From positions 165,189 to 229,188 of the IMG/VR virus record IMGVR_UViG_3300042691_055965: a DNA stretch of 64,000 bases; one strand, given 5' to 3'. The first letter of the stretch is position 1. Every line of letters starts with the position of its first letter. The translations under genes and the position numbers were made by a program. This document shows, piece by piece, positions 50,169-54,867 of the stretch. The notes under the pieces were generated by a model. That model was not told the origin of the DNA. It worked only from the letters and a program-made list of their open reading frames with translations, and searched no databases.

Positions 50169-50382
50169 ACAAGTAAACCACCCAAATCATTATGGTGGTG
50201 AAACAAACATTTACGAAGCAATCAAAGTAATTGATGCTTGGGACTTAGGGTTTTCACTTGGTAACACGGTTAAATATATTTCAAGAGCAGGCAAAAAGAA
50301 TAAAGATAAAGAATTGGAAGATTTAAAAAAGGCACTTTGGTATTTAAATCACCACATTGAAACATTAGAAAAAAATGATTGA
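50158..50382 (+). CDS. DUF3310 (T7 gp1.7 nucleotide kinase-like) protein
   Basis: VNHPNHY, GN.VKY..RAGKK, EDLKKA.WYL. Confidence 0.85.
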   Translation: MENEQVNHPNHYGGETNIYEAIKVIDAWDLGFSLGNTVKYISRAGKKNKDKELEDLKKALWYLNHHIETLEKND

Positions 50383-51223
50383 AACAGGAAAAATTATAAA
50401 TGGTGATTGTATTGAAGTAATGAAAACATTACCTGAATGTTCTGTCGATTTGATTGTTACATCACCACCCTATGGTGTTGGAATTGATTACGACGTTCAT
50501 GAAGATGATGTACCATTTGATGAATATTTGGTGTTTGCCAAAAATTGGTTAACTGAAGCGTATAATCTATTAAAAGATGACGGTAGAATTGCTTTGAACA
50601 TTCCATACGAAATCAATAGACAGAAGAAAGGGGGAAGAATTTTCTTTGTTTCAGAAATGTGGCAAATAATGAAAGAAATTGGGTTTGGGTTCTTTGGTAT
50701 CGTGGATTTAGAGGAACAATCACCTCATCGAAGTAAGACAACTGCTTGGGGATCTTGGATGAGTCCTAGTTCACCATATATTTATAATCCAAAGGAATGT
50801 GTCATTTTGGCATACAAAAAACACCACATTAAAAAGGTGAAAGGCGAACCGCAGTGGAAAGGGACACCAACTGAAATTCAACAGGAGGATGGAACCATAA
50901 AAACTAAAGTTGTGTATGAAGAAACAGATAAGAAGGAGTTTATGGAGCTTGTTTTTGGTCAGTGGAATTACTTTGCAGATACTAAATCACTCACCAAGGC
51001 AACGTTTTCGATGGACATCCCAACGAAAGCAATCAAAATACTATCCTACAAAAACGATGTGATTTTAGATCCATTTGCCGGTAGTGGTACAACATTAGTG
51101 GCGGCTGAAGTGTTAGGTAGACGATGGTTAGGTATTGAATTATCACCAAATTATAGTGAAATTGCAAAAACAAGGGTTGAATATTTCAAAACATTACAAA
51201 CAATACAAGAACTCCCACTTTAA
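50375..51223 (+). CDS. beta-class N4-C/N6-A DNA methyltransferase
   Basis: TSPPY, LDPFAGSGTT. Confidence 0.9.
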   Translation: MIETGKIINGDCIEVMKTLPECSVDLIVTSPPYGVGIDYDVHEDDVPFDEYLVFAKNWLTEAYNLLKDDGRIALNIPYEINRQKKGGRIFFVSEMWQIMKEIGFGFFGIVDLEEQSPHRSKTTAWGSWMSPSSPYIYNPKECVILAYKKHHIKKVKGEPQWKGTPTEIQQEDGTIKTKVVYEETDKKEFMELVFGQWNYFADTKSLTKATFSMDIPTKAIKILSYKNDVILDPFAGSGTTLVAAEVLGRRWLGIELSPNYSEIAKTRVEYFKTLQTIQELPL

Positions 51224-51237
51224 AAGTGGGTTTTTTT
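51214..51237 (+). terminator. intrinsic terminator
   Basis: cccactt-taa-aagtggg + T run. Confidence 0.7.
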
Positions 51238-51260
51238 ATTTTTGTAACTATTTATAAGTT

Positions 51261-53507
51261 ATGAAAATTATAATCACAGAATCGCAATACAGACAAATAA
51301 TTAAAGAATCAGGTATCAGGGATATTAAAAAAATCGCAGAAAGATACCCTAAAGCAAAAATTTACTTCCATCAAGACTTAGATGGTGTAACTACCGCAAT
51401 TGCAATGAAAAACTATCTTGAACAAAACGGCATCAAAGTAGTTGATGCTGAAGTGATTCAATATGGTGATAAAGAGTTTTCAGTTAAAAAACTTGACGCA
51501 GAAGGTGATGTGATGCCAGTGTTAGTTGACTTTGCACACGGCAAACCAATGTTTGTCATTCATACCGATCACCACGATACACAAGCTGGTGTTGAATCAG
51601 GAACTGCAACAAGTTTCAAGGCATCTAGATCGAATGTTGAAACAATATCCCAAACGATATCACCAAAAGATATTTTTCCATCTGATGACTTACTTCTTAT
51701 ATCTACTGTCGATTCTGCCAATTTCCTTGCACATGATATAACTTTTGACATGGTAATGAATTATATTTTCAAAATGGATAAGGATCAATCACTTCAAAGA
51801 AATAAAATGATGATGGGATTGGTGACAAACAAATTGTTACTTGCATTTAAAAACAAACCAAAATTTTTAGAAACATTGGTTATGAAAAGTAACCCATCTT
51901 TGTTAAGTATTTTAAATAATATTAGAGATATAATGAAGGTGGAAGGTTATGCTGAACCTGAAGAACTAGAACAAAACAAACAGAATTATATTGAAAAAAT
52001 GAAAGAATTCCCTAAAGTACAGGGTAAAGTTATTGTACAGTATGGTGGGGGTTCTATGACAAAACCAGGTTCATATGATAGATATACGCCGTTTAAGAAT
52101 AATCCTGATGCTGACTTCTTGGTAATTGCTTGGCCGACAGGAATTGTTCAAGCTTCTTGTAATGCATATAAAGGTGAACGTTCACTTAAAGGTGTTAATC
52201 TTGGTGAAATGAAAGATGAGGTTCTTAAAAAGTTTGAACCGGAATTAAGTAAATTAAAAATAAGTTTTGGTACATTAAAAAGAGTTTCTGAATCAAAGGC
52301 TGGTGAGGGTTCCGTTGGTTTTACTCTCAAAGATTTTTTAGCGATATATGGAAATGCACCATCATTGAAGATTGAAGGAAATAAAGAAGATACATTAAGT
52401 GAAATAAATAAACTTTCAGATAAGTTATATTCCACTTTAACTTTCGAAGAAAAAATGAATTTGGAAAAAGCCAGTGTTAATGGTATGGATGTCGTGAAAG
52501 CAAATTCAGGTGGACATAAATGTATTACAAACATTTCTGGTTTAAGTTATCTTTACACAAACATTAGAAGGTATAAAGATGACGAATTAAAGATGATACA
52601 AAAATATGGTGGATCAAACAATTTTGTTTTGGACATCCAAAGAAAGTTGAAGTCGATGAAAAAAAATCAAGAACTTACTGAAAAGCAAAAAACTGCAGCA
52701 GTAAACCAAATCAAAAAAGAAATAGAATCAGGAAGGTATAACCCAGACATAGACAATAAGGTAACATCATATGTAGATATGATTAAGAAAATTCAACAAG
52801 AGTTTGTAAAAGTACTTGAAAGTTATATAGAAAAAGAATCCATCAACGAAAATGTCGTTGAAAAAAAAAAGTACTATATAGACGATAGTGACATTAAAGG
52901 TGCGGGAAAAGGGGTATTTGCAAAAACAAATATCAAAAAAGGTGAACGTATCGGATTGCTTCACACAATAAAAAAAATGGGTGTCAATTATGATTTTACT
53001 GAATTGGGTAAAATGCATAATCATAGTGGTAAACCCACTTGTCATAATGAAAAAGTTGGAAATAAAAGATACTTAGTCGCATCCAAAGATTTAAAAAAAG
53101 GTGAAGAACTGACAACCAATTACAGATTACAACCAGATTTGGAACAACCAAAAGAAGGTTGGGGTAATTTGAAAGAAGAAAAAGAATTTAAACCACACAT
53201 AGATGGTTACCGTACATATTCACCATTCAAAGATTTGCCATACATAATAGTCAAAGGGAATGGTATTGACTGTGATAATATTGTTCATGACTTGGTTTTA
53301 GTAGGTGACAATAAAAAGGTTAAATACTGTAAAAAAAACACTGGAGTTTATAAAATTACAGGAGCAAGTAAAATTGTAGAATTACCTGTTGATAAAACTG
53401 AAGATGTTGAAGAAATATTTAAAAGTCCTGAAAATGTGGAACTGTGGGTTAAAGAAAAAATTAAATCAGTGGATAAAAAAGGGGAAATTAGAAGAATGAT
53501 GAATTAA
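51261..53507 (+). CDS. leader + DHH-family phosphoesterase + SET domain + unknown C-terminal domain
   Basis: HQDLDG, VD, DHH, GGH; then S.IKGAGKGVFA..IKKGE, NHS, A.KDLKKGEELT.NY. Confidence 0.8.
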   Translation: MKIIITESQYRQIIKESGIRDIKKIAERYPKAKIYFHQDLDGVTTAIAMKNYLEQNGIKVVDAEVIQYGDKEFSVKKLDAEGDVMPVLVDFAHGKPMFVIHTDHHDTQAGVESGTATSFKASRSNVETISQTISPKDIFPSDDLLLISTVDSANFLAHDITFDMVMNYIFKMDKDQSLQRNKMMMGLVTNKLLLAFKNKPKFLETLVMKSNPSLLSILNNIRDIMKVEGYAEPEELEQNKQNYIEKMKEFPKVQGKVIVQYGGGSMTKPGSYDRYTPFKNNPDADFLVIAWPTGIVQASCNAYKGERSLKGVNLGEMKDEVLKKFEPELSKLKISFGTLKRVSESKAGEGSVGFTLKDFLAIYGNAPSLKIEGNKEDTLSEINKLSDKLYSTLTFEEKMNLEKASVNGMDVVKANSGGHKCITNISGLSYLYTNIRRYKDDELKMIQKYGGSNNFVLDIQRKLKSMKKNQELTEKQKTAAVNQIKKEIESGRYNPDIDNKVTSYVDMIKKIQQEFVKVLESYIEKESINENVVEKKKYYIDDSDIKGAGKGVFAKTNIKKGERIGLLHTIKKMGVNYDFTELGKMHNHSGKPTCHNEKVGNKRYLVASKDLKKGEELTTNYRLQPDLEQPKEGWGNLKEEKEFKPHIDGYRTYSPFKDLPYIIVKGNGIDCDNIVHDLVLVGDNKKVKYCKKNTGVYKITGASKIVELPVDKTEDVEEIFKSPENVELWVKEKIKSVDKKGEIRRMMN

Positions 53508-53511
53508 TCGT

Positions 53512-53540
53512 TTGACTAATTATCATTTTTGATTTATAAT
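53512..53540 (+). promoter_or_regulatory. canonical sigma-70 promoter
   Basis: TTGACT-17-TATAAT. Confidence 0.65.
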
Positions 53541-53575
53541 TACAAAAGAATTTAATCACATTAAAAAGTATTTAT

Positions 53576-53722
53576 ATGACAGAAACAACAAAAGAAGTTG
53601 AAAACGTTATTTACTCTTATGTAAATGACAGAAACGAAAAAGTATACACACCTAACTTGGAATTTGCCCACATTATGGCAAAAAAGTATGGTACTGATGA
53701 TGTCTTCGTCGAAAAAAATTAA
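53576..53722 (+). CDS. small hypothetical protein (48 aa, not in ORF track)
   Basis: MTETTKEVENVIYSYVNDRNEKVYTPNLEFAHIMAKKYGTDDVFVEKN. Confidence 0.5.
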   Translation: MTETTKEVENVIYSYVNDRNEKVYTPNLEFAHIMAKKYGTDDVFVEKN

Positions 53723-53734
53723 AAAAATTTTACA

Positions 53735-53877
53735 AGGTACTTGTCAAATCAAAATAAAAGACTTAACTTTGTAAAAGATTTGAAACTAAAGGTGATGAAA
53801 GATACTCGTTGTCGAATCGAAAAAAAAAGTTCACAAAGTACTTGACAAATAGAAATAAAAGTCGTAACTTTGTAAAA
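53735..53877 (+). promoter_or_regulatory. tandem promoters P1/P2, 101 bp apart
   Basis: TTGTCA-17-TAACTTTG (53741/53764) and TTGACA-17-TAACTTTG (53842/53865); near-identical 42-bp repeats. Confidence 0.8.
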
Positions 53878-53881
53878 CAAA

Positions 53882-53912
53882 TTCGGAAACGTCCGAAATC
53901 GTTCTTTGAAAA
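53882..53912 (+). promoter_or_regulatory. boxB-like hairpin + boxA-like antitermination element
   Basis: ttcgga-aacg-tccgaa followed by GTTCTTTGAAAA, resembling rrn leader boxA. Confidence 0.6.
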
Positions 53913-53914
53913 TT

Positions 53915-54770
53915 GAATTATCCGTTCAGGAGTAAGTAATGAAACTGATAAAGATATTCGGCGGTGTATAGTCGTTAAATAAACCACGAAAGTGGGATAA
54001 AGTGAATCAGAAGTGTAACTGATTTGCGGTTTGGGTAACCGAACTTGAGTACACAAGCGGGATACCGTATAACCTTTAGTACCGAGGGCAACGCTGTAGG
54101 GAAAGTGGTTAGACGATTGGGCGATGTGGGTCGTTCGATTGAGGTGGGAACATCAATAGGAAGAACCCGTAGGAATATTGCAAAAAATAAGATTATCCAA
54201 TTTTATTATTGCGTTTTCCAATATGATAGGATACTTAAAACCGAAAGGTATGATAACAAACAGGTGGTGCTGACATTATCCTTGATAAACTCCTACCAAG
54301 GGGTTAATCACGAAGTAGTCTTGAAATATGGAAATGGGGACATTTCACGGAGTAGTTGAGTATCGATTCGTTCAAAAGATGGGTTGGCTCGGGTGGCGGA
54401 CCACTACTTCGAAAATCCACGACACAATACTTATGATTTAAAAAGTTGAATCAAATTAACTAAGAAAGCTATAAGGAAAAGTGTCCGTCAGGTTTGGATG
54501 AAAGGTGACTACATAGTAATGAGCTGTTCATTGCACACAGAGATCCCAAGTCAATGTGTAATTATCCGAAAAACCTTTAGTCCCGCAAGGACGAACTGGG
54601 GAGGCATCCTCGGAAAGAGTCAAGTAAGATGAGAGTAATTCAAACCTCAAGGAGTGGTTTACCTAAATAACCGTCATTGAGTTTTACTTTCCAAAAGAAA
54701 GTGGATACGAAGGGAAACAATAATACTTCTAAAGAAACTCACAAAAAACTGTAATCTCAGGTTTTTATTT
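53915..54770 (+). ncRNA. large structured ncRNA (about 850 nt; GOLLD/ROOL-class candidate)
   Basis: No credible ORF, GC above background, GNRA-capped and GU-rich stems, own promoters and terminator; ends approximate. Confidence 0.7.
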
Positions 54771-54800
54771 TAGGTTAAAAATCTTATAAGGAATTTATTG

Positions 54801-54834
54801 GGGAAACAACAAATAGTTGCTTCCCTTTTTTTTT
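54801..54834 (+). terminator. intrinsic terminator of the ncRNA unit
   Basis: gggaaacaac-aaata-gttgcttccc + T9. Confidence 0.75.
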
Positions 54835-54867
54835 ACCATAGAGGTATAAATTTTGAAAAAAATTATT

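What the first reader, a model, noticed from the sequence alone, without database searches (positions are those of the whole stretch)
51261..53507. DHH-SET protein looks like a protease-processed polyprotein
Seen: domain boundaries coincide with leader-like Glu motifs: IIKE/SG after the leader, ESINE/N before the SET, and NLKE/E before the last domain. Similar junctions occur in 57135 (ENSINE/A), 35889 (IYE/G, MNE/G, TNE/G, VEE/G, VKE/S) and 60635 (LEE/G). Known: T4-type head proteases cut after Glu at multiple sites. Inference: modules are concatenated and released as separate enzymes at head maturation. A DHH phosphoesterase could degrade cyclic/oligonucleotide signals and act as anti-defence.
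Basis: inference. Interest (0 to 1): 0.65.

Follow-up and report, generated by a model that had tools for sequence, protein, structure and literature searches.

The report
Capsid-targeted DHH–SET effector precursor
A T4-like jumbo phage encodes an 85-kDa protein whose leader, phosphodiesterase, methyltransferase and end domain are joined by exposed linkers that each carry the cutting motif of the phage's own head protease, and thousands of relatives swap their cargo exactly at these joints, so it is probably packed into the head, cut up and injected, though no cut has been observed.

Summary
Window 51261-53507 (+) encodes 748 aa. It has a 16-aa leader, a divergent DHH/DHHA1 phosphodiesterase (17-530), a SET methyltransferase (531-639) and a small beta-rich domain (640-748). 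The three [LI]-x-E motifs (E16, E530, E639) lie in the low-confidence leader segment and in the only two long disordered stretches of an AlphaFold model. The other five [LI]-x-E sites outside the leader are buried in confident structure.

The genome encodes a T4-type prohead protease (Peptidase_S77); T4's cuts after L/I-x-E. In relatives, 94 of 106 distinct leaders end in [LIVM]-x-E just before the core, and seven relatives start exactly at the predicted mature end. Core-only relatives stop 5-9 residues after the last core helix. All 62 longer ones carry [LIV]-x-E a few residues later, then unrelated cargo: SET, GNAT, sigma factor, M23 or GH19 wall hydrolases, SAM lyase.

SET and the last domain also travel as one unit in crAss-like giant proteins, without the motif. 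The gene carries the promoter-like word shared with tail and head genes.

Packaging and cleavage are inferred, not shown. Verdict: interpretation partly supported; a new variant of T4-type capsid targeting and processing.

The parts
51214..51240 (+). Terminator-like hairpin plus T-run that closes the upstream DNA methyltransferase gene and sets the DHH-SET gene apart as its own transcription unit
   Evidence: 7-bp stem with 4 GC pairs, followed by a T-run; the sequence itself.
51249..51255 (+). TATTTAT, a promoter-like word 12 nt before the ATG, shared with structural (late-type) genes
   Evidence: 193 copies in the genome, and 63 genes carry it within 50 nt upstream (about 5 expected); carriers include tail sheath, tail tube, baseplate wedge, tail spike and head protease. 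DNA polymerase, RNR, UvsX, SSB and the methyltransferase lack it.
51261..53507 (+). ORF of 748 aa (84.9 kDa), the proposed precursor
51261..51308 (+). Leader, aa 1-16, ending I-K-E (nt 51300-51308). Proposed capsid-targeting propeptide, removed after E16.
   Evidence: low-confidence helix 7-15; 94 of 106 distinct leaders in homologues end [LIVM]xE at this point; seven homologues start M-SG with no leader; 12 ORFs of the genome share the leader type.
51309..52850 (+). DHH/DHHA1 phosphodiesterase core, aa 17-530 (58 kDa), with helical inserts and a long C-terminal helix (504-525)
   Evidence: fold matches; conserved D39, D41, D90, D103-H104-H105, D151, G417-G418-H419; the family has more than 3,696 members.
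52836..52871 (+). Linker 2, aa 526-537, with I528-N529-E530 (nt 52842-52850). Proposed cut E530/N531.
   Evidence: pLDDT below 50 at 528-533; 62 of 62 longer homologues carry [LIV]xE here, and 11 core-only homologues end 5-9 aa after the helix.
52851..53177 (+). SET-domain lysine methyltransferase, aa 531-639 (12.4 kDa)
   Evidence: Pfam SET. PDB profile hits. Z 11.7. The GxG, NHS and ELTTNY motifs are read from the sequence.
53145..53222 (+). Linker 3, aa 629-654, with L637-K638-E639 (nt 53169-53177). Possible cut E639/E640.
   Evidence: pLDDT below 50 in both models; 17 of 19 distinct linkers in DHH-fused SET proteins carry [LIVM]xE. The 17 distinct linkers from giant crAss-type and stand-alone SET-unit proteins are mostly shorter (13-18 aa) and all lack it.
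53178..53504 (+). C-terminal beta-rich domain with two terminal helices, aa 640-748 (12.6 kDa); fold not identified
   Evidence: confident model; no Pfam or Atlas match; it always follows SET in other proteins.

Best explanation
The gene encodes a capsid-targeted effector precursor of a T4-like jumbo phage.

Proposed sequence of events:
1. The gene is transcribed with the structural genes.
2. The 16-residue N-terminal leader directs the 85-kDa protein into the prohead core, as the capsid targeting sequence does for T4 internal proteins and Alt.
3. During head maturation the phage's Peptidase_S77 prohead protease cuts after Glu in exposed [LIV]-x-E motifs. It removes the leader (E16/S17). It frees the 58-kDa DHH/DHHA1 phosphodiesterase from its C-terminal cargo (E530/N531). 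It possibly separates the SET methyltransferase from the last domain (E639/E640).
4. The pieces stay in the head and enter the cell with the DNA.
5. There the DHH enzyme hydrolyses short or cyclic oligonucleotides, and the SET unit methylates a lysine of a host or phage protein.

Shown: domain identities, exposed linkers, motif conservation, module exchange at the joints, presence of the protease, and the shared promoter-like word.

Inferred: packaging, every cleavage, injection, and both substrates.
For: Protease and its specificity:
- A Peptidase_S77 / phrog_207 protease lies in the same genome, inside a terminase-portal-protease-capsid block.
- It is also present in both near-complete 291-kb relatives.
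- T4 gp21 cuts after L/I-X-E, and T4 propeptides are 10-19 aa with processing determinants at P3 and P1 (PMC9026906).
- The T4 targeting sequence follows Y-x-x-F-I-x-E (PMC8442874). The spacing is echoed by Y10-x-x-I-I-x-E16 here, and by the KY.QF[IL]NEE leaders of the huge-phage homologues.

Junction 1:
- 94 of 106 distinct leaders, 5-24 aa long and of several unrelated types, end [LIVM]xE.
- Seven homologues begin M-SG, one with a stop codon directly upstream.

Junction 2:
- 62 of 62 longer homologues carry the motif against 0.44 expected per sequence. The Glu mostly lies 11-13 aa after the anchor.
- Cargo after it is unrelated from protein to protein: SET, GNAT, ECF sigma factor, M23, PG-binding plus GH19, SAM lyase.
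- P0104 and P0109 differ by one module excised between two LxE sites.

Structure: both linkers and the leader are the low-confidence parts of the model.

Cargo types (wall hydrolases, SAM lyase, sigma factor) fit proteins that act at entry.

The SET unit also heads giant proteins in the structural block of a crAss-like phage.

The promoter-like word is shared with tail and head genes.
Against: - There is no proteomic or biochemical evidence for packaging or for any cut.
- In SPN3US, nearly all known prohead-protease cuts remove N-terminal propeptides. They do not release C-terminal enzymes (PMC10052503).
- SET and the last domain form a conserved pair, so junction 3 may be a flexible hinge rather than a cut.
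- Two lineages have Lys in place of the Glu at junction 3.
- One leaderless homologue (P0196) still has [LIV]xE after the core.
- The linkers are rich in Glu and in aliphatic residues, so the motif is cheap to produce. Homologues are related, so the counts are not independent.
- The promoter-like word also precedes one helicase gene.
Confidence: 0.5

Rival explanations
1. Only the leader is removed. The rest is packaged and injected as one multidomain 'polyvalent' protein. The [LIV]xE motifs at the inner joints are leftovers of the leaders that once headed separate genes before fusion, or sites that are cut rarely.
For: - Known giant-phage protease cuts are almost all N-terminal.
- Stand-alone SET units carry their own short leader ending L-I-E or V-F-E at the same distance from the domain (P0201, P0263). 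This fits fusion of leader-bearing genes.
- SET and the last domain stay together in other phages.
- Polyvalent proteins are an established concept (PMC5512222).
Against: - A relic would decay. Instead the Glu and the aliphatic P3 residue persist across 62 of 62 diverged linkers whose other residues vary.
- New cargo of many kinds always arrives with the motif.
- An exposed gp21-type site inside a prohead full of active protease is hard to keep uncut.
Confidence: 0.3
2. The protein is an ordinary cytoplasmic late enzyme that is neither packaged nor processed. The leader is just an N-terminal helix, and the motifs reflect linker composition or helix capping.
For: - The total motif count equals chance.
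- The linkers are Glu- and Lys-rich.
- There is no direct evidence of packaging.
- The gene lies far from the head module (about 155 kb away).
Against: - The leader type is shared by 12 otherwise unrelated ORFs of the genome, one of them next to the protease gene.
- Leaders of unrelated sequence and length all end in the same motif, and homologues start exactly after it.
- Wall-hydrolase cargo (M23, GH19) makes little sense for a cytoplasmic fusion.
- The same SET unit lacks the motif in crAss-like proteins, so the motif is not a need of the fold.
Confidence: 0.15
3. The joints are cut, but by another protease (host or phage) or after injection, not by the prohead protease during maturation.
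For: Polyvalent proteins are thought to be processed by their own metallopeptidase domains, before or after delivery.
Against: - No peptidase domain was found in this protein.
- The motif matches the specificity of the protease family that the genome does encode.
Confidence: 0.05

Closest known systems
T4 internal proteins IPI-III and Alt: capsid targeting sequence plus gp21 processing
   Same: - A short N-terminal propeptide ends in L/I-x-E.
- The phage encodes a Peptidase_S77 protease.
- The leader is shared by a set of otherwise unrelated small proteins.
- The cargo includes host-modifying and anti-defence enzymes.
   Different: - Here a large enzyme carries further cargo behind additional inner protease-type sites.
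- T4 IPs are cut once (PMC8442874).
- Nothing here has been tested at the bench.
Polyvalent proteins of phages and conjugative elements (Iyer et al. 2017, PMC5512222)
   Same: - Several unrelated effector domains (methyltransferase, GNAT, nuclease or phosphoesterase types) sit in one polypeptide that is thought to enter with the DNA.
- Release of the domains by proteolysis is predicted.
   Different: - Those proteins are built around MPTase or other peptidase hubs and are thought to cut themselves.
- This family has no peptidase domain. It uses joints that match the head protease.
- Its constant part is a DHH enzyme.
Stand-alone DHH/DHHA1 phosphodiesterases (NrnA, DhhP, GdpP catalytic domain, PggH, TM1595)
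   Same: - Two-lobed DHH plus DHHA1 fold.
- All metal-binding motifs and the GGH motif are present.
   Different: - Only 10-14% identity.
- It scores below Pfam's cut-off.
- It has about 190 extra residues, as helical inserts and a C-terminal helical tail.
- The substrate is unknown.
Minimal SET methyltransferases (PBCV-1 vSET; MLL and SETD8 SET cores)
   Same: - The fold matches (Z up to 11.7; vSET TM 0.66 by target).
- The GxG, NHS and catalytic Tyr motifs are present.
   Different: - No post-SET zinc module.
- It is always followed by a conserved beta-rich domain of unknown fold.
- The target is presumably bacterial or phage protein, not a histone.
Prohead-protease maturation in giant phages (phiKZ, SPN3US)
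   Same: - Many head and ejection proteins are cut after Glu at a three-residue motif.
- Some are cut at several sites (PMC10052503).
   Different: - The motif there is A/S/G-x-E, and the cuts clear long N-terminal propeptides.
- Release of several folded enzymes from one chain has not been described in the papers read.

Membership tests
DHH/DHHA1 phosphoesterase superfamily | Motifs I-IV (DxD, D, DHH, D) and the DHHA1 GGGH-type motif | tested here: met
   D39/D41, D90, D103-H104-H105, D151 and G417-G418-H419 are present. They are at least 90% conserved in 29- and 64-sequence alignments.
DHH/DHHA1 phosphoesterase superfamily | Two-domain DHH plus DHHA1 fold | tested here: met
   Foldseek probability 1.0, E 1e-7 to 1e-5, to DhhP, GdpP, PggH, NrnA, TM1595 and RecJ. 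The model has pLDDT 88.7.
DHH/DHHA1 phosphoesterase superfamily | Pfam DHH (PF01368) above the curated cut-off | tested here: not met
   21.5 bits against 28.1. Homologues score 20-28 bits. This is a divergent branch, recognised by motifs and fold.
DHH/DHHA1 phosphoesterase superfamily | Metal-dependent phosphodiesterase activity on a defined substrate | not testable with these tools
   Needs an enzyme assay.
SET-domain lysine methyltransferase | Pfam SET above the cut-off, and the SET fold | tested here: met
   36.3-40.6 bits against 22.4. Z 11.7, rmsd 3.3 over 101 residues to MLL1.
SET-domain lysine methyltransferase | SAM-binding GxG, the NHS motif and the catalytic Tyr in ELxxNY | tested here: met
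   GAGKG (547-551), HNHS (582-585) and ELTTNY (616-621), read. They align with MLL and SETD8 motifs.
T4-type capsid-targeted, gp21-processed head proteins | The phage encodes a Peptidase_S77 prohead protease | tested here: met
   84.1 bits against a cut-off of 27, at G000:C1:60719-61135. phrog_207 E 2.8e-45.
T4-type capsid-targeted, gp21-processed head proteins | N-terminal propeptide of about 10-19 aa ending L/I-x-E | tested here: met
   16 aa ending I-K-E. The site is conserved in 94 of 106 distinct leaders.
T4-type capsid-targeted, gp21-processed head proteins | Protein present in virions and cut at the motif | not testable with these tools
   No cultured relative was found in the phage collection. 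No proteome is available.
Polyvalent proteins (Iyer et al. 2017) | Several unrelated effector domains in one chain of a phage | tested here: met
   DHH plus SET plus an unknown domain. Relatives carry GNAT, sigma factor, M23, GH19 and SAM lyase.
Polyvalent proteins (Iyer et al. 2017) | Own peptidase hub (MPTase or other) for self-processing | tested here: not met
   No peptidase family in Pfam or PHROGs scans of the protein. M23 in P0126 is cargo of the wall-hydrolase type.
Viral polyprotein | Cleavage at every joint by a viral protease, giving separate functional products | not testable with these tools
   Only the sites, their exposure and their conservation can be shown.

The most novel reading that the evidence does not exclude
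T4-like jumbo phages of Bacteroidota-type hosts, and some huge phages, use a general 'cargo grammar'. One capsid-targeting leader and a constant DHH enzyme carry interchangeable effector modules: methyltransferase, acetyltransferase, sigma factor, wall hydrolases, SAM lyase. The modules are strung together by head-protease sites. A single targeting signal therefore loads several enzymes into the head, and maturation releases them as separate injected proteins. If so, [LIV]-x-E joints could be used to read the injected effector repertoire of thousands of uncultured phages straight from sequence.
Probability: 0.4. Interest if true: 0.8.

Novelty: new variant of a known kind. Interest (0 to 1): 0.66.

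Why it matters
Proteins injected with phage DNA act before any phage gene is expressed. They decide the first minutes of the contest with host defences. For uncultured phages they are almost unknown.

If head-protease motifs mark the joints of swappable cargo, three things follow:
- Injected effectors could be predicted from sequence alone.
- The cargo found here points to chromatin-like protein methylation, signal-nucleotide hydrolysis, SAM removal and transcription takeover as early strategies.
- The leader plus joint could serve as a natural design for loading several proteins into phage heads, as is done by hand with the T4 targeting sequence.

Tried and rejected
- Nucleotide search of the phage collection found nothing. 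The protein search found only four uncultured huge phages, and those matched the DHH part alone.
- Sequence search of PDB with the single protein gave nothing usable. Only the profile and the fold searches worked.
A1 was used instead.
- The fold of the last domain (640-748) could not be named. There was no Pfam hit and no usable Atlas hit (TM below 0.5). The wide PDB scan was filled by SET matches.
- I tested whether the last domain also occurs without SET, in the P0071/P0082-type cargo. BLASTP gave E 0.18-0.34. hhalign gave probability 29%, E 6e-4 over 48 columns. This is inconclusive and is not used as evidence.
- I tested whether a stand-alone SET unit (P0201) sits next to a separate DHH gene, as a fission or fusion pair. 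The 523-aa neighbour is not a DHH protein.
- I looked for co-variation between the leader and the presence of the protease. Leaderless homologues lie on short contigs, so it could not be tested. The huge phages gave only weak S77-like matches.
- A literature search for the leader words found nothing relevant.
- Chance alone was considered and rejected on the comparative counts, not on the single sequence, where P is only about 0.005-0.04.
Full report
**What is there.** Window 51261-53507 (+) is a 748-codon ORF. It lies in a 229-kb IMG/VR virus record, of which the window is the last 64 kb. CheckV rates the record 76% complete, and IMG/VR labels it 'provirus'. The phage belongs to the T4 superfamily. 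It has a block of large terminase, portal, head maturation protease (phrog_207; Pfam Peptidase_S77 at 84 bits) and major head protein (phrog_138). It also has tail sheath, tail tube and baseplate wedge genes. Its capsid protein is nearest to those of Microcystis phage Mel-JY01 and Flavobacterium phage immuto, at 41-43% identity.

**Domains.**
- Pfam finds SET above its cut-off and DHH below it.
- An AlphaFold2 model built on 64 homologues (mean pLDDT 88.7) matches DHH/DHHA1 phosphodiesterases with Foldseek probability 1.0: DhhP, the GdpP catalytic domain, PggH, NrnA, TM1595 and RecJ. It also matches SET domains.
- All DHH motifs are present and at least 90% conserved: D39, D41, D90, D103-H104-H105, D151 and G417-G418-H419.
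- A second model of residues 531-748 (pLDDT 89.6) gives Z 11.7 to MLL1 SET for residues 531-639.
- Residues 640-748 form a confident beta-rich domain with two terminal helices. It has no Pfam, PDB or Atlas assignment.

**The observation.** The protein has nine [LI]-x-E sites, which is what its composition predicts. The evidence is therefore in where they lie.
- In the model, the only segments below pLDDT 50 are 1-3, 528-533, 629-650 and 652-654.
- E530 and E639 each lie in one of the two interdomain linkers. E16 ends a low-confidence N-terminal helix, and E7 lies within that helix.
- The other five sites (27, 316, 381, 474, 707) are inside confident helices or strands.
- Four of nine sites in 63 flexible residues gives binomial P 0.0045. 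A site in all three segments arose in 159 of 20,000 shuffles.
- On this one sequence the signal is modest. The comparative data make the case.

**The family.** The DHH part has more than 3,696 relatives in metagenomes and 793 representatives at 50% identity. The constant part runs from the residue after the leader to a conserved last helix (the IQxEFVxxL motif, ending near residue 525).

**Junction 1.**
- Upstream of the conserved S/G-G-I/L-R start there are 106 distinct leaders of 5 aa or more (nearly all 5-24 aa). They belong to several unrelated sequence types, and 94 end in [LIVM]-x-E.
- Most of the remainder end in I/L/V-N-E-E or Y-L-E.
- Seven homologues have no leader and begin M-S-G. 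In one of them a stop codon lies directly upstream, so the start is real.
- The huge-phage homologues (LR745206, LR756502) begin with K-Y-x-Q-F-I-N-E-E. This is close to the T4 capsid targeting sequence MKTYQEFIAE (PMC8442874).
- T4 work places the targeting determinants at residues 4 and 7 and the processing determinants at residues 8 and 10 (PMC9026906). The window's leader keeps the same spacing: Y10, I13, I14, E16.

**Junction 2.**
- Eleven distinct core-only homologues end 5-9 residues after the anchor Leu of the last helix.
- All 62 distinct longer tails carry [LIV]-x-E within 28 residues. The Glu mostly lies 11-13 residues after the anchor. Composition-matched shuffles give 0.44 per sequence.
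- What follows the motif is unrelated from one protein to the next:
  - SET;
  - GNAT (P0078, P0113);
  - an ECF sigma factor (P0129);
  - Peptidase_M23 (P0126);
  - a peptidoglycan-binding domain plus GH19 (P0125);
  - S-adenosylmethionine lyase/DUF3293 (P0177, P0199);
  - several unnamed modules.
- P0104 and P0109 are near-identical except that one small module, bounded by L-S-E and L-D-E, is missing from P0109.
- Stand-alone SET units have their own short leader ending L-I-E or V-F-E at the same distance from the domain (P0201, P0263).

**Junction 3.**
- Among DHH-fused SET proteins, 17 of 19 distinct linkers between SET and the last domain carry [LIVM]-x-E. The other two have Lys in place of Glu.
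- The same SET-plus-last-domain unit also occurs in giant proteins of 745-2,382 aa: at the start of most, after about 47 residues in some, internally in one and at the C-terminus of one. One of these lies beside a crAss ring protein, in the structural block of a crAss-like phage.
- There the linker is shorter, Gly-rich and lacks the motif. The motif is therefore not needed by the fold. It appears in the lineage that has the DHH fusion.
- Equally, SET and the last domain are a conserved pair. They probably work together, whether or not they are cut apart.

**Context that bears on packaging.**
- Twelve ORFs of the genome share the leader type (x-L/I-T-E-S-D/Q-L/Y-x-x-I-V... ending [LIV]-x-E). 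One is a 98-aa ORF next to the protease gene, and five lie in the window near this gene. A second leader type also exists.
- The gene follows a terminator-like hairpin. It has TATTTAT 12 nt before its ATG.
- That word occurs 193 times in the genome. It lies within 50 nt upstream of 63 genes, where about 5 are expected.
- Annotated carriers are tail sheath, tail tube, baseplate wedge, tail spike and head protease, plus one helicase. DNA polymerase, ribonucleotide reductase, UvsX, exonuclease, SSB, SbcC and the methyltransferase lack it. This suggests, on a small sample, co-expression with virion genes.
- Both near-complete relatives (291 kb) that carry a DHH homologue also encode Peptidase_S77.

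**Mechanism proposed.** The steps, and the split between what is shown and what is inferred, are as stated under best explanation: late expression, targeting to the prohead core by the leader, then cuts by the S77 protease after E16 and E530 and possibly E639. The predicted products are 2.0, 58.0, 12.4 and 12.6 kDa. The pieces would be retained in the head and ejected with the DNA. The DHH enzyme would then hydrolyse short or cyclic oligonucleotides. Which ones is open. The nearest folds act on pApA, pGpG, c-di-AMP, pAp and nanoRNA. An anti-signal role was already proposed for jumbo-phage DHH enzymes (PMC7824862). The SET unit would methylate a lysine of a nucleoid or other protein.

**What argues against.**
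- In SPN3US, all identified prohead-protease cuts except its self-cleavage remove N-terminal propeptides (PMC10052503). Release of C-terminal enzymes would be a departure from that.
- The main rival is that only the leader is removed and the inner motifs are relics of fused leader-bearing genes.
- Against a mere relic stand two points: the motif persists in linkers whose other residues drift, and it arrives with every new cargo.
- A purely cytoplasmic protein is hard to square with the shared leaders and with the wall-hydrolase cargo.

**Relation to what is known.** The nearest system is T4's capsid targeting sequence with gp21 processing of internal proteins and Alt. The nearest concept is that of polyvalent proteins, which are thought to be cut by their own metallopeptidase domains (PMC5512222). 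This family has no such domain. From memory, not checked here: MuF-fused polymorphic toxins of temperate phages also pair a constant head-protein part with variable C-terminal cargo. I found no paper that describes head-protease motifs as the joints of a swappable cargo family. The search was limited to the held library.

**Verdict.**
It is strong for the leader and for the DHH/cargo joint as natural module borders with a protease-type motif. It is weaker for the SET/last-domain joint. It is untested for actual cleavage, packaging and the anti-defence role.
- It is a new variant of a known kind.

Noticed in passing
window 54348-54763 (+), within the ORF-poor stretch 53508-54850: A GOLLD RNA (Rfam RF02032; 313.7 bits, E 1.8e-90, full model) lies directly downstream of the DHH-SET gene. 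Its variable 5' part probably fills part of 53600-54347. No tRNA gene was found in the window.
   Followed up: partly
window 55254, 57689, 59016, 60635, 61946 (ORF starts); genome C1: 1433, 3697, 4283, 50164, 50713, 61583: Twelve otherwise unrelated ORFs share one N-terminal leader, with an inner L/I-T-E site and an end [LIV]-x-E about 9-13 residues later. They look like a T4-style set of internal proteins. One is a 98-aa ORF next to the protease gene.
   Followed up: partly
window 33837, 58546, 63533; genome C1: 1, 5040(-), 15142(-), 19452, 19872, 22139, 26018, 147630: A second leader type (E-I-x-R-x-x-x-L-M ... ending I/L-S/N-E before Q or G) heads further ORFs, among them proteins of 753, 805 and 998 aa.
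   Followed up: no
whole genome; in the window e.g. 51249-51255: TATTTAT is a strongly placed promoter-like word. It has 193 copies, and 63 genes carry it within 50 nt upstream. It is found before tail, baseplate and head-protease genes and most leader-bearing genes, but not before replication genes.
   Followed up: partly
The module that follows it (begins A-E-Y-K-G-R-K-V) is preceded by an aliphatic-N/x-E site in most of 58 distinct homologues. Some homologues start M-N-E-A-E or M-T-E-A-E, right at the joint.
   Followed up: partly
ORF 35889 has a weak double-zinc-ribbon hit. Similar multi-part proteins flank a stand-alone SET gene in L010. Conservation of these joints was not tested.
   Followed up: no
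L012 8511-15659 (P0227) and proteins P0228-P0262: The SET-plus-beta-domain unit occurs in giant proteins (745-2,382 aa), at the N-terminus of most. P0227 lies next to a crAss ring protein gene. P0238 carries an H-E-F-T-H (zincin-like) word further on. These look like crAss-type virion cargo proteins.
   Followed up: partly
L010 11044-11220: A 58-aa Hc1-like (PF07432, histone H1-like) gene lies 2.4 kb from a stand-alone SET-unit gene. It is a possible lead to the SET target, since a chlamydial SET enzyme is reported to methylate Hc1 (from memory).
   Followed up: no
homologues P0090 and P0103: A weak Ntn-hydrolase-like (AAT, PF03417, E 3e-4) cargo begins with Cys directly after an L-N-E site. 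A cut there would expose the N-terminal Cys that such enzymes use as nucleophile.
   Followed up: no
L013 (IMGVR_UViG_3300031857_001163, 26.6 kb): A gene 100% identical at protein level to the DHH-SET gene lies on a second IMG/VR contig, so the same phage was assembled more than once.
   Followed up: no
window 50375-51223 (+): The gene just upstream is a DNA methyltransferase (phrog_67, E 1.3e-45). It ends in the terminator-like hairpin and lacks the TATTTAT word.
   Followed up: partly
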